Virus record (IMG/VR): IMGVR_UViG_3300049048_000052
Span: 124,001-188,000 of that record
Reading direction: 5' to 3' (one strand)
Length of the DNA stretch: 64,000 nucleotides
In this document: positions 5,954-63,354 of the stretch, piece after piece
Layout: every line of letters starts with the position of its first letter
Position numbering within the stretch: position 1 is the first letter of the stretch
Made by a program: the position numbers and the translations under genes
The notes under the pieces: model-generated
Databases searched by the model: none
What the model was told of the DNA's origin: nothing
The model's input: only the letters and a program-made list of their open reading frames with translations

Positions 5954-6499
5954 TTAACTCATTGGAGTTAGTTGGTGTATTAGTTTATAAGCGTTCTTAA
6001 CTAGATCTCTAGAGAGCATCTTACCACCAGATATCAATTTTATAATTGGGTTCTTGCGTGAGTGGTCTAACTGAAATCTAGCTTGAGGATATAAGTCCAG
6101 GAAGGATGTGGCAGTATCTTTATTAGAGGCAGCTATTTCTATCCTATAAGTCTTAACTTTATAGACTTGTACTAAAAGTTGCTTTATCAGATCTATTAAA
6201 GTAGGATCCTGGTTGCAGAAGTAAACATGATTTGTTTTATCTGTATGCCAGCCCTCACATAAATAGGCCGTATGGGCAGCAATGGAAAGAGGTGTTAGGA
6301 GTAAATCATCTGTAGGGGAGATATAGTTCTTCCTAGCTAGAAAGTTATACTCTGAGGCAGATCTCATTGGTATATGGTACTTCCTTAAGTAAGACCTAAT
6401 AGTCTTATGGTTACAGGCTAGTAACTGACCTATCTGATAGGGATTAAGTTCCTGAGTCAGGTATAGATCCTCAAGTACCTCTTTATTAATTAACTTCAT
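5954..6499 (-). CDS. intron-encoded HTH + LAGLIDADG-like endonuclease, antisense to the intron
   Basis: N-terminal HTH (LEDLYL...QIGQLLACNHKTIRSYLRKYHI); AYLCEGW...VYFCNQDPTLI LAGLIDADG-like block. Confidence 0.7.
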   Translation of the reverse strand: MKLINKEVLEDLYLTQELNPYQIGQLLACNHKTIRSYLRKYHIPMRSASEYNFLARKNYISPTDDLLLTPLSIAAHTAYLCEGWHTDKTNHVYFCNQDPTLIDLIKQLLVQVYKVKTYRIEIAASNKDTATSFLDLYPQARFQLDHSRKNPIIKLISGGKMLSRDLVKNAYKLIHQLTPMS

Positions 6500-6753
6500 A
6501 ATCCTGAGCCTTCATGTAGAAATACATGTTGTGAACGAAGCTATATGCGGGAAACGCTTAAAGCCTACAACACTATATGTCTACCAAGATATAAGTAACA
6601 GTTTGTAGGATGTAACAATAGCCAATCCGCAGGGAAGATACCTAGGTATCCCCTCAGAGACTAAACGCTTTGCACCTTAACGTAGAGACGAAGGTGATGA
6701 TATAGTCCAGACTACAACAGCTTACGCTGGCCTATGAAAGTAGGAGTAGTAAG
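5956..6753 (+). mobile_element. group I intron in tRNA-Leu anticodon (after U34)
   Basis: Exon ends in U, intron ends in G; core elements ATATGCGGGAAA (P), AATCCGCAGG (Q), TCAGAGACTAAA (R), GATGATATAGTCC (S); IGS-like GAGCCT at 6506-6511. Confidence 0.9.
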
Positions 6754-7924: not shown

Positions 7925-8272
7925 ATGGAAATGGATATATTTAGCCCCTCAAGACTCGTCTGTATTCACTATGGAAATAATGCTATAGATGAGATAATGG
8001 ATGGTAGAGCTGAGGAAGCCCTAGATAAACTAGAGAAGGCTCGTGAGGATGATATGTTCGATATGGAGCATTATCAATCTATACTGCTCTATGTGGGTGC
8101 ATGCCTTAAACAAGAGAGCATGGGCCATTATATACAATTCCTATTGACTATCTTTGATGAAGATGATATTACTAGTATTAACACCGCAGATTCTAAGGTC
8201 AATGGTGTCCTAGCGGAAGCGGCAGCAATCCATAGCGGGGATGGAGCAACGGGAGGCTCGATGGTCTCATAA
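7925..8272 (+). CDS. hypothetical protein (3' end overlaps tRNA)
   Basis: ORF with AAGGAAGG SD; stop codon falls in the anticodon loop of the tRNA at 8234. Confidence 0.55.
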   Translation: MEMDIFSPSRLVCIHYGNNAIDEIMDGRAEEALDKLEKAREDDMFDMEHYQSILLYVGACLKQESMGHYIQFLLTIFDEDDITSINTADSKVNGVLAEAAAIHSGDGATGGSMVS

Positions 8273-8308
8273 GCCATACATCGCTGAGTTCAATTCTCAG
8301 CCCCGACA
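8234..8308 (+). tRNA. tRNA-Met(CAU), initiator-like body, irregular acceptor stem
   Basis: D stem GAGC/GCTC; anticodon arm ATGGT-CTCATAA-GCCAT; T arm CTGAG-TTCAATT-CTCAG; only CGGGG/CCCCG of the acceptor pairs. Confidence 0.7.
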
Positions 8309-8310
8309 TT

Positions 8311-8535
8311 GTCAGTTTACCTGTCCTGACGTTGTGAAAAGATAGGTGTAGGTCATAGGCCTAACTAGCAAGAATTGAGTTCGAATCTCAACAGGTCCAT
8401 TTCGAGGGCCTGACTTGGTAATCGATTGTTAGCATGAGGAACTATGACTGAAGGTGTGTACAACCAAAGTACAGAACAACAAGTGCAACCAATAACATTG
8501 TACCCTTCTCAAGGGTAAGTTCTATAGTAGTGTAA
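8311..8535 (+). ncRNA. ssrA: tmRNA, circularly permuted (two-piece): acceptor piece about 8311-8399, coding piece from 8406; tag ORF 8485-8535 ATNNIVPFSRVSSIVV*
   Basis: T arm TTGAG-TTCGAAT-CTCAA and CAGGTCC-A lie upstream of the 5' strand GGGCCTG (G3:U70); P2 helices GTCATAG/CTATGAC and CTAGCAA/TTGTTAG; pseudoknots at 8311-8347 and about 8453-8473; cyanobacterial-type NNIVPF tag. Confidence 0.9.
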
Positions 8536-8540
8536 TCTAC

Positions 8541-9305
8541 TCAGGCGTTTAGTATACTAAACGCCTGCTCTTTTTTACGCATACAGTAGGGACCACCTAA
8601 GTTATATAACCTAAATATAAAAGTCTTAAGGATTTTACCTTGAAAGGAGAAACCGTACTGATTATTCCAGTTGGGATTCTTACTTTGCAAGTCCCTCATA
8701 TGTACATTAAGGGATATATCTAGTAGTTTGTTGAGCCTAGAGGCTAGAGTATACATAAAAGACTTTGAGCATCCATAGGCTGTAAGTCTACGGGAGGACC
8801 AACACCCGTCAGAGTCTAGATATCCTCTAATGAAATCTAACTCGTAGACGCTGTCTATAAGAGGCTCAGGGTAAATCATAGTCTTGGACTTATTACTTTC
8901 TAACTTTAGGATAGTAGTTAGATCTCTATGTAGACTAGTGGAACATATAGCGAGCTGAAGACAGTTAGAAGCTATATTCCTTATTTTATAATCGGTATTG
9001 AGGTTAGATTGTATCTGTTCTAGAATATCCCTGTCCGAGGTAGTAAATACTATCTGACATCCATTTCTATGTAAGTGACCATCCCCATACAATACACCTA
9101 ACATCCAAGCTTTAAAGGTGTCCATAGGGAACAATTTATAGTTCTTAAGCTTAGATAATGGCTTATAGGACATTGCCCCGGAGCTCTGCAGGACTTTGTA
9201 TATACAATAAGAGGATAGCCCTAATTTAGAACTAATATTTGTAACAGACTGACCCTCCTTATACATAGTTATAATAGGCGTTGGGTTAATATGAGTAGAT
9301 TTCAT
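8541..9305 (-). CDS. double-motif LAGLIDADG homing endonuclease with N-terminal HTH
   Basis: AWMLGVLYGDGHL and DFIRGYLDSDGCW motifs. Confidence 0.9.
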   Translation of the reverse strand: MKSTHINPTPIITMYKEGQSVTNISSKLGLSSYCIYKVLQSSGAMSYKPLSKLKNYKLFPMDTFKAWMLGVLYGDGHLHRNGCQIVFTTSDRDILEQIQSNLNTDYKIRNIASNCLQLAICSTSLHRDLTTILKLESNKSKTMIYPEPLIDSVYELDFIRGYLDSDGCWSSRRLTAYGCSKSFMYTLASRLNKLLDISLNVHMRDLQSKNPNWNNQYGFSFQGKILKTFIFRLYNLGGPYCMRKKEQAFSILNA

Positions 9306-10122: not shown

Positions 10123-10128
10123 ATACCT

Positions 10129-10200
10129 GCCACCTAGGCCAAATGGTGCGGCGGTGAGTTCATACCTCACTTATAGTAAGTTCGATTCTTACAGGTGGTA
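10129..10200 (+). tRNA. tRNA with CAU anticodon (Met or Ile2)
   Basis: Acceptor GCCACCT/AGGTGGT+A; anticodon arm GTGAG-TTCATAC-CTCAC; T arm GTAAG-TTCGATT-CTTAC. Confidence 0.85.
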
Positions 10201-10220
10201 TTGTCGAGTTAAAGGAATAT

Positions 10221-10991: not shown

Positions 10992-11061
10992 TTCCCAGTC
11001 GCATAACTTGCGTTCCCAACTGGGATTCTTAGCAATGGTTGGCTTAGTCCAATCATTTCTT

Positions 11062-11134
11062 GAGGCTGTCGTCTAAAATGGTAGGACTCCCCAAGTTAGT
11101 GGGGCAGATGTAGGTTCAAATCCTACCGGCTTCA
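11062..11134 (+). tRNA. tRNA-like RNA with 6-nt anticodon loop (undetermined isotype)
   Basis: Acceptor GAGGCTG/CGGCTTC+A (G3:U70); D stem GTCT/GGAC; CCCCA-AGTTAG-TGGGG; T arm GTAGG-TTCAAAT-CCTAC. Confidence 0.7.
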
Positions 11135-11139
11135 TTTAT

Positions 11140-11211
11140 GCAGTGTTGGTCTAATGGATAAGACGTCTCCAAACTAAGGAGTTAATGTAGGTTCGATTCC
11201 TGCTAACTGCG
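11140..11211 (+). tRNA. tRNA-like RNA, loop AAACTAA (nominal ACT, no U33)
   Basis: D stem GTCT/AGAC; CTCC-AAACTAA-GGAG; T arm GTAGG-TTCGATT-CCTGC; 5-bp acceptor GCAGT/ACTGC. Confidence 0.6.
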
Positions 11212-11316
11212 TTTGTGATTTATACAACTTAATATAGTGACCATAATCACCCCACATTACACAAAGCATATCCTCTTAATATTCAGTATTAACTACTGTA
11301 GGTATTAGAGGATATT

Positions 11317-22958: not shown

Positions 22959-24077
22959 ATGGACAGTGAAATAGTAAGCAAGAGGACAATATTGTTAGGC
23001 CTTGGGGGTAGTCATTCCTATGGTCTAAATGTAGAAGGTTCTGATATAGATGGTAAGGGTATATGTGTAGGGCTAAAGGAGCATTACCTAGGCTTCACTA
23101 CATTTGAACAGAAGGACGCAGGTTGGGATATAAGTAAGACGTTATGGAAGGATCATCCTATTAAGATAGGTGAGGACCTAGTTGTATATGAACTACGTAA
23201 GTACCTGCAGTTGGCTGCGGATGCTAATCCTAATATACTAGAACTCCTATGGTTGAAACCAGAGCAGTATCTATTACAGACAGAGGTAGGTGCTGAGCTG
23301 ATAAAGCATAGGCAACTGTTTATGACTAGTAAGTGTAAATGGACCTTTAGTGGTTATGCCCATAGCCAATTAAAGAAGATACAGGCTCACCGTAAGTGGT
23401 TATTGGATCCACCGGATAGGAGACCTGAGCCACAGGACTTTGGTCTTGGTCTGGGTAATAAAGATCCTATGACCAAGGAACAACTACATGCCTTCTATGA
23501 GTTTCTATATATCCTGGTTAGAGATGCTATCGAATATGCTCAACCAGCTGAGGACTTATATAACATATTAATTGCTCGTATAGATTACAAGGGTCTATTC
23601 AAACAACATCCACTATCTATAGGGGTACTGCCCTATGTACAATCCTTAACTAGATCCTCTGATGACTTTATAAGTCTACTGCATGCTAGTCAGGAGTATA
23701 GAGGAGCTCTGACCCGTTGGGATGCTTATCAGAATTGGAAGCTTAATCGTAACAAGAAGAGGGCAGCTACTGAGGCCGCTATTGGTTATGACAGCAAACA
23801 TGGTATGCATCTAGTAAGACTGTTGTCTATGGGTATTGAGATCCTAGAGACAGGGGAGCTTATAGTGGATAGAGGCATAGCTGGGGATAGAGATGATCTT
23901 ATGGCCATACGTAACTGCGAGTGGCCCTATGAGAAGCTAATGGACTATGTTAGTCTCTTAGAGCAAAGAGTAGAGGATGCGTTTAAGCAAACTAGACTTC
24001 CTAGATCCTGTGACCGAACTAAGGTCAATGAGTTGTGTATTGAGTTAGTTGAGATAATGGGTTGGTATGACTATTAG
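22959..24077 (+). CDS. Pol-beta superfamily nucleotidyltransferase (YcgL/RlaP-like)
   Basis: GSHSYGL...SDIDGKGI, NPNILELL, FSGYA..Q, GYDSKHGMHLVRLL. Confidence 0.85.
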   Translation: MDSEIVSKRTILLGLGGSHSYGLNVEGSDIDGKGICVGLKEHYLGFTTFEQKDAGWDISKTLWKDHPIKIGEDLVVYELRKYLQLAADANPNILELLWLKPEQYLLQTEVGAELIKHRQLFMTSKCKWTFSGYAHSQLKKIQAHRKWLLDPPDRRPEPQDFGLGLGNKDPMTKEQLHAFYEFLYILVRDAIEYAQPAEDLYNILIARIDYKGLFKQHPLSIGVLPYVQSLTRSSDDFISLLHASQEYRGALTRWDAYQNWKLNRNKKRAATEAAIGYDSKHGMHLVRLLSMGIEILETGELIVDRGIAGDRDDLMAIRNCEWPYEKLMDYVSLLEQRVEDAFKQTRLPRSCDRTKVNELCIELVEIMGWYDY

Positions 24078-39716: not shown

Positions 39717-41257
39717 ATGAAATTAGAAGTACTAGATAAAGGTTTTATAGAGGTGGTCGATACCTTAGGTAGCGATCTAACCGTTGTTAATAGCGCTAGG
39801 GTATCCTTTGGACATCGTAAGGAGTCCCTTGATAAATCAGATATTAAGTTAATTGGATATTTAAAGAAGCACAAGCACTATTCTCCATTTCGCCATATGA
39901 TGGTGCAGCTGCATATCAAGATGCCTGAGGTGGTGGCAAGACAACTGTTAACAGAAATGGTGACCAGTAAATACAACTCCCTTGTATTAATCTAGTAATA
40001 GATTATGCAAAGGATAAATCAATGATTCTAGAGACTAAGGGCGATAAGGTACTACGTAGATGCGATACCTGTGGTAATGAGAAGTGGGTTGAGAAATGGA
40101 AGTACTATAAACTAGAGGAGCACACCTGTAGAGATTGTTACTGCCGATTAAAAGCAGCAGCACGTAAAGGTAAACCTTCTAGATACAAAGGTATTATTAG
40201 GCAACCCAATCCTAAGAGAGGGAGTACTTATATTAATTCCTCAGGTTACGTCGAGGAGTATATAGGTGCTGTAGATAATAATAGGAAAGGCAAGTATTAT
40301 CTCCAACACAGATTAATAGTTGAGAAGTACCTAGGTAGAGTCCTTGATAAATCAGAACTAGTTCACCATATTAATGGTGACAAAACTGATAATCGACTTG
40401 AGAACCTATACCTATGTCAATCTATGTCTCACCACAAGACTCTACACCAACAATTAGAGCAAGTATCTATGCAATTGGTTAAACTAAATCTTATAGAATT
40501 TGATAATGAAGCTGGTAGCTATAGAATAGCAGCCCATATCAGTAATGATATGGTGAATAATCCTGTGAATTCAGGGGAACCCCTAACGTATAATGACGAG
40601 GGCAATCCTGATCCAAGCTTTGAAGAGTAGTCTTCATTGAAGGAGCAACGACTATCCGTAAGGAGTAGGGCTCAAGGGAGCTCGAAGCGCAGGACATCCT
40701 AATAGGATGATGATATAGTCTGAGCTTTAGGGAGACCTAAAGAGAGTGTATGGAGCCGATATACTCGTAACATAACTGATAAACATGTCGTAGGTATTGA
40801 GACCTCCTCTTCCTCTGTATGTAAGGATCATGCATGGAATGAGATTAGTAGACGTTATGTAGAGATAGATGATTACTATGTGCCAGACATCTGGCGCCTG
40901 CAGTCTCCTTCTAATAAGCAAGCATCTCAGTTAGATGAACACGGTAATCCTATAGTTAACGAGGCTATACAAGAGTGGGCCTGTAAGGAATACGCAGACT
41001 TTATAGCTTCCCTAGATCTTAAGGTTAAAGCATTTATAGCTAAGGGTATTGCTAAAGAGCAGGCACAGATCATGCTGCCTATCTCTTTCTATACTGAGAT
41101 CTATTGGACCGCATCATTCCAGGCCATCATGAACTTCATTGAGCTTAGGAATGACAACCATGCCCAATGGGAGATTAGGCAGTATGCCCTTGCACTCCTC
41201 CGAATAATGGAGCAATTATTCCCAGTCTGCACTAATGCATGGTTAGAGAATAGCTGA
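39717..41257 (+). CDS. thyX: flavin-dependent thymidylate synthase, split by group I intron (exons 39717-39948, 40779-41257)
   Basis: NSARVS, HYSPF; spliced junction restores VARQLYKHVVG...WNEISRRY; HAQWEIR. Confidence 0.95.
39949..40778 (+). mobile_element. group I intron in thyX
   Basis: U|...G| boundaries; AATTCAGGGGAA (P), AATCCTGATCCAAG (Q), GCAACGACTA (R), GATGATATAGTCT (S); IGS GCAG at 40529-40532. Confidence 0.9.
40022..40630 (+). CDS. intron-encoded HNH homing endonuclease
   Basis: CxxC pairs; QHRLIVEKYLGR.L...E.VHHINGDKTDNRLENL. Confidence 0.9.
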   Translation: MILETKGDKVLRRCDTCGNEKWVEKWKYYKLEEHTCRDCYCRLKAAARKGKPSRYKGIIRQPNPKRGSTYINSSGYVEEYIGAVDNNRKGKYYLQHRLIVEKYLGRVLDKSELVHHINGDKTDNRLENLYLCQSMSHHKTLHQQLEQVSMQLVKLNLIEFDNEAGSYRIAAHISNDMVNNPVNSGEPLTYNDEGNPDPSFEE

Positions 41258-41290: not shown

Positions 41291-41785
41291 ATGGAAGATT
41301 CAATAGAAAGCTGTTTACAGGATACTGATGTTATAGCTGTTTATAGGCAGTACATAGAGGTATCAGATCCAGAGAAGTGGACCATAATGCCTCTTAAGGA
41401 ATGGGTAGAGAATGTAGATAAGGGAGACCGTAGAGGTTACTCACTAAAAGAGTCTGTACTATCCTGCATCAGAACTGCTATATGGCATAGGACTACTTCC
41501 TGGGAGGACCAAATGAAGCTAGCCAAGCCTATGGATACTGAGAAGATGCGCTCAATGGGAATGAATACCCAGAAAGCATATCAGTTCTTCAATGAAGATC
41601 CTATAGAGGCTTCTATAGACGATTGCACCCTAGAGGATAGTCTCAAGGCTAGGAAGCTAGAGATCTATATCAAGGAATTAGATATTGATAAGTTAAGAGA
41701 GTTCATATTGGGCTTCTATAAGCAGACGCTTATGAAGGAGGCCCTATATAAAAAGATGTTAAAGGTAAATATAAGTGGAAGCTAA
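41291..41785 (+). CDS. nblA: protein with C-terminal NblA (phycobilisome degradation)-like domain
   Basis: TLE.....R...........D....F....YKQ....EA.Y...LK aligns ungapped to the NblA pattern. Confidence 0.65.
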   Translation: MEDSIESCLQDTDVIAVYRQYIEVSDPEKWTIMPLKEWVENVDKGDRRGYSLKESVLSCIRTAIWHRTTSWEDQMKLAKPMDTEKMRSMGMNTQKAYQFFNEDPIEASIDDCTLEDSLKARKLEIYIKELDIDKLREFILGFYKQTLMKEALYKKMLKVNISGS

Positions 41786-50378: not shown

Positions 50379-51542
50379 ATGTTATTAGTACAAGAGTATC
50401 TGTCTTCTGGCAAGTCACTAGAAGACTTATCAAATGAGTTAGGATTAAATATTAAGCATCATCCTGTCGATCCTCTAGTCATCATTGACTATGATCAGAT
50501 CAGGAGTCCTAGAAAGGATCCTATTGTGCGTGAGTGCAGAGGTCTTGTCCTAGAGAAGGATACGTGGAAGGTAGTAGCCAGATCATTCAATCGCTTCTAT
50601 AATTGGGGAGAGTTCCCTGAGGAGGAGCACCTATTTGATTGGAAGAATGCTACCTGTGATGAGAAGATAGATGGATCTATGATCATCCTCTACCATTACA
50701 ATGGAACCTGGAGAGTTAACACTAGATTCAGTTGGGCTGATAGTATAGTGGGCGATGGTCCCTATACCTGGACCCAATTGTTTGAGATAGCTATGGGTAA
50801 AACACTACAAGAAGTTGGGGATATCCTAATAGCTGAGAATAATAGGTCCTATGTATTCGAATTGGTATCTCCGTATAACAAGGTAGTCCGCTGGTACCCT
50901 AAACCTAAACTTTACCTATTAGGGGAGTTTAGGTTGGATGTGGATCACGATGAGTACCATGATGCGGGTTTAGCTTTGCATGCGGCCTTCCTTGATGTAG
51001 ATAGGCCTAATCGCTATATCCTCAATAATATAAGGGCTATCAAGAAGTACCTAAGGGAACTAGAGGCTAATGACCCAACTAATGAGGGTGTAGTCATCAA
51101 TGATGGTATTCACTATTGGAAGTTAAAGAATGAGAAGTACTTGGTCCTCCATAAGATGAGGGGCGACTCAGGTAACTTATATCATCCTAAATACTTAGTA
51201 CCCTTTATTCTTACTGGTGAGACCTATGAGCTACTCACTTACTTCCCAGAGGTAGAGGATAAGTTACTAGAGTATAAGGCTCGTATAGATAAAGAGTATG
51301 ACCTATTACAAAAGGTATGGGCTGATGCTTGTGGCATACGCTCTAGGAAAGACTTTGCTCTTGCTATCAAGGATGCTACTAGATTCAATAGTCTACTCTT
51401 TAGTCTTCGTAATGAGACCGATGTAATCCTATTCCCAGAGGAGGAACTAGGAGATAGTATGGACCGCCTAGATGAGATGTGGCGTAACTCTTTAGACTTA
51501 ATACTAAAAGTATTATTTGCTAAGGAGGTTGTTCATGTCTAA
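50379..51542 (+). CDS. RNA ligase, T4 Rnl1 family
   Basis: ECRGLVL, FNRFYN, EKIDGS, FELVSP, EGVV, KLKN. Confidence 0.9.
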   Translation: MLLVQEYLSSGKSLEDLSNELGLNIKHHPVDPLVIIDYDQIRSPRKDPIVRECRGLVLEKDTWKVVARSFNRFYNWGEFPEEEHLFDWKNATCDEKIDGSMIILYHYNGTWRVNTRFSWADSIVGDGPYTWTQLFEIAMGKTLQEVGDILIAENNRSYVFELVSPYNKVVRWYPKPKLYLLGEFRLDVDHDEYHDAGLALHAAFLDVDRPNRYILNNIRAIKKYLRELEANDPTNEGVVINDGIHYWKLKNEKYLVLHKMRGDSGNLYHPKYLVPFILTGETYELLTYFPEVEDKLLEYKARIDKEYDLLQKVWADACGIRSRKDFALAIKDATRFNSLLFSLRNETDVILFPEEELGDSMDRLDEMWRNSLDLILKVLFAKEVVHV

Positions 51543-52038
51543 GGCAGGTATAGTATTGATAACCATTGGTATACCTGGATCCGGTAAGTCTACATTCATA
51601 AAGGAAAAGATAAAGGCGTTTCCTGATGCGGTCTATATAAATGCTGACAGTATTAGAGAGGAGCTAACAGGTGATGCTGGTAATGGTACTAGGGACCGTC
51701 AGGTTTGGAATCTATTAGATGAGAGATACCTAGAGGCCCTAAGAAGTGAGAAAGAAGTTATAGCATTAGACTGTACCTTTACTCGACCCAAGAGAAGGAA
51801 GCCCTATATACAACGGGCTAAGAGCTTTGGTTATATAGTACATTTATTGTTTATGGATTGTCCTCTCGAATTAGCAATAAAGAGGCAGGACTATAGAGAT
51901 AGGAAGGTGCCAATAGATGTCATCAAGACCATGTATGATAAGCTAACAGGTGCCACAGAATACGAGGAGATAAACTGTCGTGTACATAGAATTACTCAGA
52001 AGGATAGTGGACCTAATGGGGGACTGCGATTACCGTAA
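51535..52038 (+). CDS. polynucleotide kinase (AAA_33) domain protein
   Basis: GIPGSGKST, NADSIR, D.T....RR, R...R.RKVP.DVI. Confidence 0.85.
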   Translation: MSKAGIVLITIGIPGSGKSTFIKEKIKAFPDAVYINADSIREELTGDAGNGTRDRQVWNLLDERYLEALRSEKEVIALDCTFTRPKRRKPYIQRAKSFGYIVHLLFMDCPLELAIKRQDYRDRKVPIDVIKTMYDKLTGATEYEEINCRVHRITQKDSGPNGGLRLP

Positions 52039-52300
52039 GAACCAGAATGGTACCTATACTATGACAGTGGGTTACCATGAGAGCTATAAATCTTTTAATG
52101 GGCCTACTATAGAGGACGTTACAGAGCAGGCATGTAAAGAATTAAATATTGGAGATGACAATGAACAGGCAGGAATTGCTAGGTGATCTAAATAAGAGAT
52201 TGGCAGCTATGGACATCCTTACTCTTAGAAAAGCAGCTAGGCTTATCAGCAATATAGAAGAGAACAAACAGACTTGGACTCTACACAGAGTAGGGGACCA

Positions 52301-53017
52301 ATGAGATACGCACTTATAGCTGATGTACATGGCTGTTATAACCAATTAATAATAGCACTTAAGTATCTAGGGTTTTATAGAGATGAGGAGGGTACCTGGA
52401 CCACTAATGGTAAGTACTTCGTTATTTCATTAGGAGACCTTAATGATTATAGACACAAGGAAGGTCTAGAGAAGTCTAGTTCTATAGGTTGTATTAATAC
52501 AATGATGCAGCTAAATCAACTAGGCTGGTCAGAGACCGTTAACTCTAATCACCAGGATAAGTTTGTCCGTTGGCTTAGGGGTAATAGGGTAACTACTACC
52601 TGGGGTCTAGAACATACTGTTGAGGAGTTCAAGAGGTATGCCTCTGAAGGCACTAGGGAGGAGGTTAGGCAAAGACTACTTAAGTGGCTTGAGTGTAGAC
52701 CTAATTACTATTACTTTGAGGAGGATGGTAAGAAGTATGTGGCAGCACATGCTTATTACTCACCCAATACACCTAATAAGGAACCTAAGCAGGCTAAGGA
52801 TATATCTATATATGGACCTAGAGTAGGTGGTGGTTCTAATCAGCGTGCTGAGTGGTGGAAGTATCAGGCGCCTCATGACCGGTTTGTTATAGTGGGTCAC
52901 TATCATGAAACATGGTTCCTTGAGGGATCCGCTGGTATAGATGGGGGTGCAGGAGAGGGAGGACCTCTTAATATCTACATACCCTCTACCAAGGAACTGA
53001 TAAGTATAGAATACTAA
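52301..53017 (+). CDS. metallophosphoesterase (Pnkp-type phosphatase)
   Basis: DVHG, GDLND, SNHQDK, AAHA, VGHYH, IDGG. Confidence 0.85.
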   Translation: MRYALIADVHGCYNQLIIALKYLGFYRDEEGTWTTNGKYFVISLGDLNDYRHKEGLEKSSSIGCINTMMQLNQLGWSETVNSNHQDKFVRWLRGNRVTTTWGLEHTVEEFKRYASEGTREEVRQRLLKWLECRPNYYYFEEDGKKYVAAHAYYSPNTPNKEPKQAKDISIYGPRVGGGSNQRAEWWKYQAPHDRFVIVGHYHETWFLEGSAGIDGGAGEGGPLNIYIPSTKELISIEY

Positions 53018-62098: not shown

Positions 62099-62725
62099 AT
62101 GAATGTGAGAAGTAACCTAATTGCCATAGAGGGCATAGATGGATGTGGTAAGTCTATACAGACGGACCTACTAGTCCAGTGGCTTATAAGTAAGGATATA
62201 AAAGTTAGAAAGACAGCACAGTCTGGCGGTACCGCTATAGGTAGTCTTATAAGAAGATTAACCTTTGATACAGACAAACATGAGGGTGAGACCTTAGGGC
62301 CGCTGGCTACCCAACTACTATTTATGGCAGATAGGGTACATCATCAGGAAGAGGTTATTATACCTGCCCTTAATGCTGGACATATTGTTGTTAGTGATAG
62401 ATATATACAATCTGGCTTTGCATATGGTCAAGCACATGGGCTAACTGAGAATCAATGTAAGTCTATGTTTGAGGCCTGTACCTTTGTCAAACCCGCTGTA
62501 ACTATATGGTTGGATCTACCCGTACAATTAGCCCTATCAAGGGTAAGAGTACAACAAAGCTTTGAGAAGTTAGGTAGACCTTTCTATGTAAAGCTAAGGG
62601 AACATTATTGGAACCTCTTTATAGATGACCATAGTATGGAACGTATAGAGATAACTGAACATGACGATGTTGTATCCGTACAGGATCAAATAAGGGATAT
62701 TGTAAAGGAATACTTGAGGATCTAA
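62099..62725 (+). CDS. tmk: thymidylate kinase
   Basis: IEGIDGCGKS, LLFMADR..H, VVSDRY..S..AYG. Confidence 0.95.
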   Translation: MNVRSNLIAIEGIDGCGKSIQTDLLVQWLISKDIKVRKTAQSGGTAIGSLIRRLTFDTDKHEGETLGPLATQLLFMADRVHHQEEVIIPALNAGHIVVSDRYIQSGFAYGQAHGLTENQCKSMFEACTFVKPAVTIWLDLPVQLALSRVRVQQSFEKLGRPFYVKLREHYWNLFIDDHSMERIEITEHDDVVSVQDQIRDIVKEYLRI

Positions 62726-63354
62726 TGATTACAACCTATGGCCCTATTCCTAGGGAAGTAGGTCTAGCATTATCAGGTGGATGTGACTCAATGGCTGTAC
62801 TGGACTATCTACTATTAAGTAGAAGAAAGGTTACAGCCATTCATGTTGATCATGGGGATGAATACTCAGCTGAATGTGTAGACCTGGTAACTAAATATTG
62901 TAAATATAGAGATGTACCATTATACGTCTCTGAGCCTATTGGACCTAAACCAATGGGAATGTCTGAAGAAATGTGGTGGAGACAGGAACGCTATGAGTTC
63001 CTCCGGCATATACAATCTATTATTGATTTACCTATTATTACTGCCCATAACCTTGATGATCAGGTAGAGACCTGGTTAATGAGTATGATTAAGGGCACCC
63101 CCAAGTTAATCCCAAGCTATAGGGATAACCCTAATATTATTAGGCCCTTTCTACTTACAAGGAAAGAGAGTCTGAGAGACTGGTGTATACAAAAAGCTGT
63201 GCCCTTCCTAGATGACCCCGAGAATGATAATTGGGAACATGAGAGATGTTATACAAGACATCACCTGGTGTCTGCAGTAACCGATATTAATCCTGGCATT
63301 CATCGTAAGGTAGCTAAGTTAGTGAGAGACAAATATGGAGAATTATCCAGGTGA
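62725..63354 (+). CDS. tilS: tRNA(Ile)-lysidine synthetase, catalytic domain only
   Basis: ALSGGCDS, HVDHG, R..RY, TAHNLDDQVET, IRPFL, DDPEN. Confidence 0.85.
   Translation: MITTYGPIPREVGLALSGGCDSMAVLDYLLLSRRKVTAIHVDHGDEYSAECVDLVTKYCKYRDVPLYVSEPIGPKPMGMSEEMWWRQERYEFLRHIQSIIDLPIITAHNLDDQVETWLMSMIKGTPKLIPSYRDNPNIIRPFLLTRKESLRDWCIQKAVPFLDDPENDNWEHERCYTRHHLVSAVTDINPGIHRKVAKLVRDKYGELSR

What the first reader, a model, noticed from the sequence alone, without database searches (positions are those of the whole stretch)
8311..8535. Circularly permuted two-piece tmRNA in a phage
The 3' half of the tRNA-like domain (T arm + CAGGTCC-A, 8375-8399) precedes the 5' half (GGGCCTG, 8406), with only a 6-nt spacer. 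G3:U70, helix P2, pk1, an upstream pseudoknot and a cyanobacterial-type tag are all visible. Two-piece tmRNAs are established in alphaproteobacteria, some betaproteobacteria and marine picocyanobacteria; the phage tmRNAs I know are one-piece. This one is very compact, and its tag ends in VV rather than the AA degron, which may rescue ribosomes while changing the fate of tagged proteins.
Basis: partly seen in the sequence, partly recalled or inferred. Interest (0 to 1): 0.8.

Follow-up and report, generated by a model that had tools for sequence, protein, structure and literature searches.

The report
Two-piece tmRNA gene in soil cyanophage
A 252-kb phage from soil carries a genuine split (circularly permuted) ribosome-rescue RNA gene of the cyanobacterial type. 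Such genes are already catalogued in marine and freshwater phages, so this is a very divergent new example, not a new kind of thing.

Summary
ARAGORN calls a permuted tmRNA at 8310-8626 with tag ATNNIVPFSRVSSIVV. Two Rfam models match with E 1e-7 and 1.8e-10 but fall below their curated cut-offs. A covariance model built from 12 homologues without the window finds one site in the window (8344-8481, 47.4 bits, E 4.9e-10), and the window forms 26 of its 27 consensus pairs, many through compensatory changes.

- G3:U70 and discriminator A
- 6-nt spacer with no encoded CCA
- helix P2, pk1 and the upstream pseudoknot
- tag frame collinear with the Gloeobacterales tag
- stop codon in a hairpin loop, then an intrinsic terminator

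The novelty premise is wrong. Buchholz et al. 2022 list 53 permuted tmRNAs in isolated phages, including cyanophages S-SSM7, S-CAM1, S-CAM3 and S-CRM01. My IMG/VR scan found 33 more viral contigs with one. Cyanophage copies share the 4-6 nt spacer, the missing CCA and often non-AA tag ends (TV, AV, TA).

This copy is new in four ways:
- it comes from a soil jumbo cyanophage with no relatives in the collections searched
- it is the most divergent copy seen
- it lacks the pseudoknot after the tag
- its tag ends in VV

Processing, charging and tagging remain untested.

The parts
8233..8309 (+). tRNA(CAT) directly abutting the tmRNA. Its 3' processing would create the 5' end of the acceptor piece (inferred).
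   Evidence: ARAGORN. Rfam tRNA 30.7 bits against a cut-off of 29. The top of the acceptor stem has two mismatches. Several marine cyanophage copies are also directly preceded by a tRNA.
8310..8399 (+). Acceptor piece, about 90 nt before CCA addition: 5' pseudoknot, 3' strands of P2, T arm, 3' strand of the acceptor stem and discriminator A.
   Evidence: ARAGORN places the 3' tRNA domain at 8364-8399. Supported by the R1 alignment and the MFE fold.
8312..8346 (+). Upstream H-type pseudoknot, the PK4 equivalent. Stem 1 is 8312-8316 with 8326-8330. Stem 2 is 8320-8325 with 8341-8346. Loop 3 is GTTGTGAAAA.
   Evidence: Stem 1 appears in the MFE and centroid folds. The same layout, register and loop 3 occur in two Gloeobacterales genes. 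By my reading, two stem 1 pairs and two stem 2 pairs there are changed on both sides (sequences). A GTGAAAAG loop also precedes P2 in unrelated one-piece tmRNAs.
8351..8371 (+). 3' strands of helix P2 (8351-8358, 8360-8362, 8365-8371).
   Evidence: Duplex with 8426-8449 is -20.2 kcal/mol, 18 pairs. The same pairs appear in the MFE fold and the model alignment.
8375..8391 (+). T arm: 5-bp stem and loop TTCGAAT.
   Evidence: Three of the five stem pairs differ on both sides from the consensus and still pair.
8392..8399 (+). 3' strand of the acceptor stem (CAGGTCC) plus discriminator A. No CCA is encoded.
   Evidence: U70 at 8396 lies opposite G3 at 8408.
8400..8405 (+). Intervening spacer TTTCGA, removed on maturation (inferred).
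   Evidence: Homologous spacers are 4-6 nt in cyanophage copies. In Gloeobacterales the equivalent is CCA plus 5 nt.
8406..8576 (+). Coding piece, about 170 nt: 5' acceptor strand, D-loop analogue, 5' strands of P2, pk1, tag frame, two hairpins and the terminator.
   Evidence: ARAGORN places the 5' tRNA domain at 8406-8433. Supported by the alignment and the fold.
8406..8449 (+). 5' acceptor strand GGGCCTG (8406-8412), D-loop analogue (8413-8425) and 5' strands of P2 (8426-8432, 8437-8439, 8442-8449).
8453..8473 (+). pk1. Stem 1 is 8453-8455 with 8463-8465 (3 bp). Stem 2 is 8457-8461 with 8469-8473 (5 bp).
   Evidence: Stem 2 is in the centroid fold. It sits at the same position as pk1 of the homologues. 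Stem 1 is read from the sequence and is short.
8485..8535 (+). Tag reading frame: resume codon GCA, 16 codons, stop TAA. Peptide ATNNIVPFSRVSSIVV.
   Evidence: ARAGORN. The frame is collinear with the Gloeobacterales tag ATNNVVPF(A/V)RARATVAA, including the preceding CAAGTGC. It shows synonymous codon differences, for example Arg AGG versus CGT/CGC.
8501..8541 (+). Two hairpins within and just after the tag frame: 8501-8507 with 8511-8517, and 8526-8530 with 8537-8541. The stop codon lies in the loop of the second.
   Evidence: MFE and centroid folds. The first hairpin is also picked up by the terminator scan on the opposite strand.
8542..8576 (+). Intrinsic terminator: 11-bp hairpin plus a T run. 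It follows the tag hairpins directly; there is no pseudoknot after the tag.
   Evidence: Terminator scan and fold. Eleven of the 12 homologues have a pseudoknot here; viral locus L090 also lacks it.

Best explanation
This is a genuine, probably functional, circularly permuted (two-piece) tmRNA gene of the cyanobacterial lineage. It is carried by a 252-kb phage that most likely infects a non-marine cyanobacterium.

Proposed mechanism (every step is inferred from the anatomy and from what is known of permuted tmRNAs; none is shown):
1. The gene is transcribed together with the abutting tRNA(CAT), up to the terminator at 8542-8576.
2. tRNA 3' processing at 8309/8310 sets the 5' end of the acceptor piece.
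3. RNase P cuts 5' of G8406 and creates the coding piece.
4. The 6-nt trailer is trimmed back to A8399, and the host CCA-adding enzyme adds CCA.
5. The two RNAs stay joined by the 7-bp acceptor stem and the 18-bp P2.
6. Host AlaRS charges the RNA through G3:U70 and A73. Host SmpB and EF-Tu deliver it to ribosomes stalled on broken mRNAs.
7. Translation resumes at GCA 8485, adds the 16 residues ATNNIVPFSRVSSIVV, and stops at UAA 8533.

The benefit to the phage would be to keep ribosomes free during infection. This fits the tRNA array, the TilS-type enzyme and the RNA-repair genes in the same genome.
For: - Detection: ARAGORN permuted call. Rfam E 1e-7 and 1.8e-10. Independent model R1 gives a single hit in the window, 47.4 bits, E 4.9e-10.
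- Structure: 26 of 27 consensus pairs form in the window. Many form by changes on both sides in the T arm, P2 and acceptor pair 4:69. Across the 13 sequences 97.4% of cells pair, against 42-52% when the partners are slid. The P2 duplex is -20.2 kcal/mol.
- Identity elements: G3:U70, A73 and the TTCGA T loop are intact.
- 5' pseudoknot: same register as in Gloeobacterales, with compensatory pairs.
- Tag: collinear with Gloeobacterales, 7 of the first 8 residues identical, four of those seven encoded by different synonymous codons. Among GTDB species representatives the tag pattern ATNN[IV]VPFxR was found in a tmRNA only in two Gloeobacterales.
- Termination: stop codon in a hairpin loop, followed by a clean terminator.
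- Context: the gene sits in a tRNA array, like the cyanophage homologues.
- Phage and host: rIIA, UvsX and clamp loader. DNA polymerase is closest to Microcoleus and Microcystis phages. RNR is closest to Nodularia phages. An NblA-like domain is present.
- Precedent: permuted tmRNAs in phages.
Against: - Both Rfam models fall below their curated cut-offs. Homologues score 121-182 bits; the window scores 43.
- Some positions invariant in all 12 homologues differ. GGAC before the T arm is AGAA here, TTCGAC is ATCGAT, and the 5' end GGGG is GGGC.
- pk1 stem 1 has only 3 bp. The pseudoknot after the tag is absent.
- No relative of this phage or of this tmRNA was found. The second soil run holds the identical sequence. 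Conservation within the lineage therefore cannot be measured.
- No RNA run was listed, so expression and cleavage into two pieces are unshown.
- No SmpB and no CCA-adding enzyme were found in the ORFs I scanned. Only 64 of the 252 kb were read.
- The tag lacks the usual terminal Ala-Ala.
Confidence: 0.75

Rival explanations
1. It is a decaying relic: a permuted ssrA captured from a cyanobacterium or another cyanophage that no longer works and is drifting towards the phage's A+T-rich composition.
For: It is by far the lowest-scoring member, at 43 bits against 121-182. Otherwise invariant residues have changed. The pseudoknot after the tag and the Ala-Ala end are lost. There are no relatives to show conservation.
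Against: Drift would break helices, yet 26 of 27 pairs survive. Many survive only because both sides changed. G3:U70, A73 and the T loop are intact. The 16-codon frame is open and keeps its peptide through synonymous changes, and a clean terminator follows.
Confidence: 0.12
2. It is a modified-function tmRNA. One version rescues ribosomes but marks proteins with a tag that the host Clp proteases do not read, or that a different protease reads. The other version acts mainly as a competitor for host SmpB, as proposed for the domain-only molecule of mycobacteriophage DS6A.
For: The tag ends in VV. Other cyanophage tags end in TV, AV or TA, while the two Gloeobacterales tags end in VAA. PMC4131195 describes the DS6A tRNA-like-domain-only molecule as an inhibitor that may titrate SmpB.
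Against: A full resume context, frame and stop are kept. A pure decoy would not need them. The end is still hydrophobic, which by general knowledge of C-terminal degrons could still be read by proteases. No experiment on any phage tag was found in the searchable literature.
Confidence: 0.1
3. It is not a tmRNA at all. It could be a chance juxtaposition of tRNA fragments, or an attachment-site remnant of a host ssrA.
For: My first pattern scan picked up exactly such a false positive, a tRNA end next to a tRNA start (locus L001). Integrating elements often carry ssrA fragments (PMC9004378).
Against: Both halves, P2, pk1, the tag and the terminator are present in the right order. E-values are 1e-7 to 5e-10 from three models. 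The tag is homologous to cyanobacterial tags. The context is a tRNA array in a large phage with rIIA, UvsX and clamp-loader genes, not an integration junction.
Confidence: 0.02

Closest known systems
Permuted tmRNAs of marine and freshwater cyanomyoviruses: S-SSM7, S-CAM1, S-CAM3, Sf-FS3, AG-345-P14 and IMG/VR loci L039, L057, L090, L117, L161. S-CRM01 is listed in PMC9004378 Table S1.
   Same: Same permutation. No encoded CCA and a spacer of 4-6 nt. Placed next to tRNA genes. NNIV-F-R core in the tag, and often non-AA tag ends. S-SSM7 and L057 appear, by my reading, to share a 5' pseudoknot. L090 shares the lack of a pseudoknot after the tag.
   Different: Those score 121-159 bits on RF01851; this one scores 43. 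Identity is only about 64%. No BLAST match exists, even at word size 11. The tag begins ATNN instead of ANNIV or an extended AKT...AANNIV. The acceptor pair 4:69 is C:G. The source is soil and the phage is unrelated.
Rfam RF01851 cyano_tmRNA, as found in Gloeobacterales (loci L165 and L169)
   Same: Same gene order. The 5' pseudoknot has the same register and a GTGAAAAG loop 3. GACTGAAG follows P2 and CAAGTGC precedes the resume codon. The tag begins ATNN-VPF-R.
   Different: Gloeobacterales encode CCA, keep a pseudoknot after the tag, end the tag in VAA and score 158-182 bits. Overall identity to the window is no higher than for the marine phage copies. A Gloeobacterales origin is therefore a lead, not a result.
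Alphaproteobacterial-type permuted tmRNAs of pelagimyophages and OM43 phage Melnitz (PMC9004378)
   Same: A two-piece tmRNA carried by a large lytic-type phage. The same proposed role of maintaining hijacked translation.
   Different: A different bacterial lineage of permuted tmRNA. Tags are of the ANDN...LAA type. Melnitz has a glutamine riboswitch at the 3' end, and Rfam found none here.
One-piece tmRNAs of mycobacteriophages (Bxz1 group) and Bacillus phage G; the domain-only molecule of DS6A (PMC4131195)
   Same: A phage-borne ssrA.
   Different: Those have the standard gene order, not the permuted one. DS6A lacks a tag frame.

Membership tests
tmRNA (any form) | tRNA-like domain: 7-bp acceptor stem with G3:U70, discriminator A, and a T arm with a TTCGA-type loop | tested here: met
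   GGGCCTG pairs with CAGGTCC, with G8408 opposite U8396. The discriminator is A8399. The loop is TTCGAAT.
tmRNA (any form) | Long helix P2 joining the tRNA-like domain to the rest of the molecule | tested here: met
   18 pairs, -20.2 kcal/mol. 14 of the 15 consensus P2 pairs form in the window.
tmRNA (any form) | pk1 just upstream of a tag frame that resumes on an Ala codon and ends in a stop | tested here: met
   pk1 is at 8453-8473 (3 + 5 bp) at the homologous position. The frame runs from GCA 8485 to TAA 8535. pk1 stem 1 is short.
tmRNA (any form) | Tag ends in a hydrophobic Ala-Ala type degron | tested here: not met
   The tag ends in Ile-Val-Val. Several cyanophage tags also lack AA.
Permuted (two-piece) tmRNA gene | The 3' half of the tRNA-like domain lies upstream of the 5' half on the same strand, separated by a short spacer | tested here: met
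   The halves are 8364-8399 and 8406-8433, with a 6-nt spacer.
Permuted (two-piece) tmRNA gene | The transcript is cut into two RNAs, and CCA is present at the end of the acceptor piece | not testable with these tools
   No RNA run was listed. The two DNA runs show only presence. CCA is not encoded.
Permuted (two-piece) tmRNA gene | Alanylation, SmpB binding and tagging activity | not testable with these tools
   These need biochemistry. No SmpB gene was seen among the window ORFs scanned.
Rfam RF01851 cyano_tmRNA | Score at or above the curated gathering cut-off of 70 bits | tested here: not met
   43.1 bits, E 1.8e-10, full-length match 1-288. Homologues score 121-182 bits.
Rfam RF04321 tmRNA_permuted | Score at or above the curated gathering cut-off of 47 bits | tested here: not met
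   45.0 bits, E 1e-7, full-length match 1-213. This is 2 bits short.
Cyanobacterial lineage of permuted tmRNA | Tag with the cyanobacterial NN(I/V)V-F-R core, and a structured 5' end of the acceptor piece directly upstream of P2 | tested here: met
   Tag alignment. The 5' pseudoknot is shared with Gloeobacterales and apparently with S-SSM7 and L057.

The most novel reading that the evidence does not exclude
The non-Ala-Ala tag ends of cyanophage tmRNAs, of which this VV is the extreme, may be an adaptation. Under this reading the phage RNA frees stalled ribosomes, but its tag is not read by the host ClpXP/ClpAP, or it sends products to another protease. The phage would then gain ribosome rescue without loading, or while re-routing, the host's proteolysis. 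Loss of the pseudoknot after the tag, and the placement among tRNA and RNA-repair genes, would make this a minimal phage-tailored rescue module used against host RNA-cleaving defences.
Probability: 0.15. Interest if true: 0.55.

Novelty: new member of a known kind. Interest (0 to 1): 0.3.

Why it matters
- It extends the known range of phage-borne two-piece tmRNAs from marine and aquatic phages to a soil jumbo cyanophage with no sequenced relatives.
- It shows that curated Rfam cut-offs miss such divergent copies. GenBank records of S-SSM7, S-CAM1, S-CAM3 and Sf-FS3 also leave their copies unannotated or call them hypothetical proteins.
- It is a natural minimal version: pk1, the PK4-like knot and no pseudoknot after the tag. 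It could be used to ask which parts of a two-piece tmRNA are needed.
- Its VV end, together with the TV, AV and TA ends of other cyanophage tags, gives a concrete and cheap test of whether phage tags are degrons.
- It is not a new class of element.

Tried and rejected
- My first collection pattern had the T stem one base out of register. It did not even match the window, and returned one false positive, a tRNA next to a tRNA.
Only 5 of 120 were tmRNAs.
- The single metagenome scan used the GTGAAAAG loop plus the T arm. It returned unrelated one-piece tmRNAs and the Aphanocapsa genome again, and no relative of the window.
- Protein routes to relatives failed. The 674-aa neighbour has one 43% relative, whose locus has no tRNA or tmRNA. 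The Hsp20 neighbour matches only itself among 5.8 billion proteins.
- The second soil run holds the identical sequence, so it gives no variants.
- No RNA run was listed.
- Pairwise identity does not tell a Gloeobacterales origin from a marine-cyanophage origin; all values are about 64%.
- I suspected that the 'nucleotidyltransferase' at 22959-24077 was a CCA-adding enzyme. It is an RlaP-type RNA-repair protein.
- The five Chloroflexota hits to the tag pattern are a conserved protein-coding motif, not tmRNAs.
- The Sharkady and Williams 2004 paper is not held.

Full report
**1. What is there**

- T arm at 8375-8391.
- 3' acceptor strand CAGGTCC at 8392-8398, followed by discriminator A at 8399.
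- Six bases, TTTCGA.
- 5' acceptor strand GGGCCTG at 8406-8412.

The two acceptor strands form seven pairs, and the third is G:U. ARAGORN calls a permuted tmRNA at 8310-8626. It places the 3' tRNA domain at 8364-8399 and the 5' domain at 8406-8433. The tag is ATNNIVPFSRVSSIVV, from GCA 8485 to TAA 8533-8535.

At Rfam's gathering thresholds nothing is reported for this site. A permissive search of 8150-8750 gives two full-length matches:
- RF04321 tmRNA_permuted: 45.0 bits, cut-off 47, E 1e-7.
- RF01851 cyano_tmRNA: 43.1 bits, cut-off 70, E 1.8e-10.

**2. Independent test**

I collected 12 homologues:
- Two Gloeobacterales genomes (L165, L169).
- Five IMG/VR viral loci (L039, L057, L090, L117, L161).
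- Five phage records from GenBank (the INPHARED collection): S-SSM7, S-CAM1, S-CAM3, Sf-FS3 and the single-cell-derived AG-345-P14.

I aligned the tRNA-like domain, P2 and pk1. RNAalifold recovered P2, the T arm and the acceptor stem. I then built a covariance model without the window.

- Searched over the window and those loci, the model gives exactly one hit in the 64-kb window: 8344-8481, full length, 47.4 bits, E 4.9e-10.
- In the resulting alignment the window forms 26 of the 27 consensus pairs.
- Many of these pairs are of types seen in no other sequence. The T-stem pairs are UA, UA, GC, AU, GC against the usual AU, GC, GC, GC, GC. Five of the six inner P2 pairs are changed. Acceptor pair 4:69 is C:G, not the usual G:C.
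- Over all 13 sequences 97.4% of cells pair, against 42-52% when partners are slid by 1-3 columns. Eighteen pairs show changes on both sides.
- The alignment was fitted to the model, which favours the structure. The window did not contribute to the model.
- The P2 duplex (8351-8371 with 8426-8449) is 18 pairs at -20.2 kcal/mol. It also appears in the plain MFE fold (z = -2.63).

**3. The other elements**

*Upstream pseudoknot.* Stem 1 is 8312-8316 with 8326-8330, and it appears in the MFE fold. Stem 2 is 8320-8325 with 8341-8346. Loop 3 is GTTGTGAAAA. The two Gloeobacterales genes have the same layout and register and nearly the same loop 3. Two stem 1 pairs and two stem 2 pairs are changed on both sides (my reading of the sequences). 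S-SSM7 and L057 appear to have a comparable knot. The other marine copies have a plain hairpin here. A GTGAAAAG loop just before the 3' strand of P2 also occurs in unrelated one-piece tmRNAs. That fits this knot being the PK4 equivalent.

*pk1.* It lies at 8453-8473, with stems of 3 and 5 bp, at the homologous position.

*Tag frame.* It is collinear with the Gloeobacterales frame, starting from the shared CAAGTGC. Seven of the first eight residues are identical, and four of those seven use different synonymous codons. Arg is AGG here and CGT/CGC there. This indicates selection on the peptide.

*End of the gene.* Two hairpins lie within and just after the frame, and the stop codon sits in the loop of the second. 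An 11-bp terminator with a T run follows at once. Eleven of the 12 homologues have a pseudoknot between the tag and the terminal hairpin. The window and L090 do not. 'Compact' is therefore right: about 267 nt in all.

**4. The carrier**

- The window is part of IMG/VR contig IMGVR_UViG_3300049048_000052, 251,780 bp.
- It was assembled from a soil metagenome. The same sequence is present at low depth in a second soil study.
- It encodes rIIA, UvsX, a clamp loader, a helicase and a family A polymerase, and a class II RNR.
- The closest isolates are cyanophages: Microcoleus and Microcystis phages for the polymerase at 33-34%, and Nodularia phages for the RNR at 47%.
- An NblA-like domain scores just under Pfam's cut-off, at 24.4 against 25 bits. 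PhoH and two Hsp20 genes are also present.
- A cyanobacterial host is therefore likely. Which one is open.
- Among GTDB species representatives the tag pattern was found in a tmRNA only in two Gloeobacterales. Overall identity to Gloeobacterales and to the marine phage copies is the same, about 64%.
- The phage DNA is about 43% G+C. From memory, cultured Gloeobacter genomes are near 60%.

**5. What is known**

- PMC9004378 scanned 18,146 phage genomes. It found tmRNA genes in 402, with 133 unique forms. Of those, 53 were ARAGORN-permuted, and 50 of the 53 came from marine or aquatic phages.
- Its Table S1 lists S-CAM1, S-CAM3, S-CRM01, S-SSM7, HTVC008M, phiCbK-like Caulobacter phages and Stenotrophomonas phages as permuted.
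- My corrected pattern scan of IMG/VR, together with the earlier loose scan, gave 36 permuted ARAGORN calls. One of them is the window's own contig, and two are contigs of one viral genome, which leaves 33 other viral contigs.
- The cyanophage copies have no encoded CCA and spacers of 4-6 nt. Their tags end in ...ATV...VAV...VTA...ATA or ...VAA.
- The GenBank records of these cyanophages do not annotate the gene.
- I found no experimental work on any phage tag.

**6. What remains particular**

- This copy is the most divergent seen. It scores 43 bits where the others score 121-182, and it has no BLAST match to any phage record.
- It deviates at a few residues that are invariant in all 12 homologues.
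- It lacks the pseudoknot after the tag, and its tag ends in VV.
- It has no relatives in IMG/VR, the JGI metagenomes or the 5.8-billion-protein set.
- Conservation within its own lineage, expression, processing, charging and tagging are all untested.

**7. Mechanism and verdict**

The best reading is a working two-piece tmRNA. It would be matured by the tRNA-processing enzymes from a tRNA(CAT)-tmRNA precursor and completed by host CCA addition. Host AlaRS would charge it, and host SmpB would use it to free ribosomes during infection. This fits the surrounding translation-maintenance genes:
- At least 13 tRNA genes.
- A TilS-type PP-loop enzyme.
- An RNA ligase, kinase and phosphoesterase cluster.

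A relic is the main rival and is disfavoured by the compensatory changes. A re-routed or non-degron tag is possible but unsupported.

Novelty: a new member of a known kind. Interest is modest.

Noticed in passing
window 8541-9305 (-): A free-standing LAGLIDADG homing-endonuclease ORF (PHROG endonuclease 1e-24; Pfam LAGLIDADG_3) converges on the tmRNA. Its last codons overlap the tmRNA terminator hairpin. This recalls the homing endonucleases in the T4 tRNA region and the LAGLIDADG genes inside tmRNA introns.
   Followed up: partly
window 40022-41257 (+), intron 40510-40742: A group I intron (Rfam 91.9 bits) precedes a ThyX C-terminal part at 40880-41257, so thyX appears to be split. An HNH endonuclease ORF at 40022-40630 overlaps the intron start. 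A second group I intron lies at 6487-6728 (66.8 bits); its host gene was not identified.
   Followed up: partly
window 41291-41785 (+): An NblA-like (phycobilisome degradation) domain lies at residues 113-158 of this ORF. It scores 24.4 bits against a cut-off of 25. It is a marker of freshwater cyanophages and a hint to a phycobilisome-bearing host.
   Followed up: partly
window 62725-63354 (+); tRNAs at 8233-8309 and 10128-10201: A PP-loop ATPase of the TilS (tRNA-Ile lysidine synthase) type (99.9 bits) sits in a genome with two tRNA(CAT) genes. One of the two may be a tRNA-Ile2 that the phage enzyme modifies.
   Followed up: no
window 50379-53017 (+) and 22959-24077 (+): A putative RNA-repair set: Rnl1-like RNA ligase, P-loop kinase (AAA_33/Zeta_toxin fold), a metallophosphoesterase, and a separate RlaP-type nucleotidyltransferase.
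   Followed up: no
window 8233-8309 (+): The tRNA(CAT) abutting the tmRNA has two mismatches at the top of its acceptor stem in ARAGORN's drawing. It only just passes Rfam's tRNA cut-off, at 30.7 against 29 bits. It may be degenerate, or kept mainly as a processing signal.
   Followed up: partly
window 8336-8342 with 8569-8575: The MFE fold pairs the A-rich loop 3 of the 5' pseudoknot with the terminator's U tract. The same A-run/U-run complementarity exists in the two Gloeobacterales genes. It could be an extra contact between the two pieces or a trivial match.
   Followed up: no
window 11061-11212 (+): ARAGORN reports a tRNA with an undetermined two-base anticodon (11061-11135), followed by a tRNA-Ser with anticodon ACT (11139-11212). 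Both pass Rfam's tRNA cut-off.
   Followed up: no
L165 2633-2946 and L169 897-1211: Both Gloeobacterales genomes have a permuted tmRNA with an encoded CCA. They give the highest RF01851 scores of all sequences tested (158 and 182 bits). The cyanobacterial two-piece form is therefore not confined to marine picocyanobacteria.
   Followed up: partly
L207-L210 (S-SSM7, S-CAM1, S-CAM3, Sf-FS3): The deposited annotations of these cyanophages do not mark the permuted tmRNA. In S-SSM7, S-CAM3 and Sf-FS3 a 'hypothetical protein' CDS overlaps it.
   Followed up: yes
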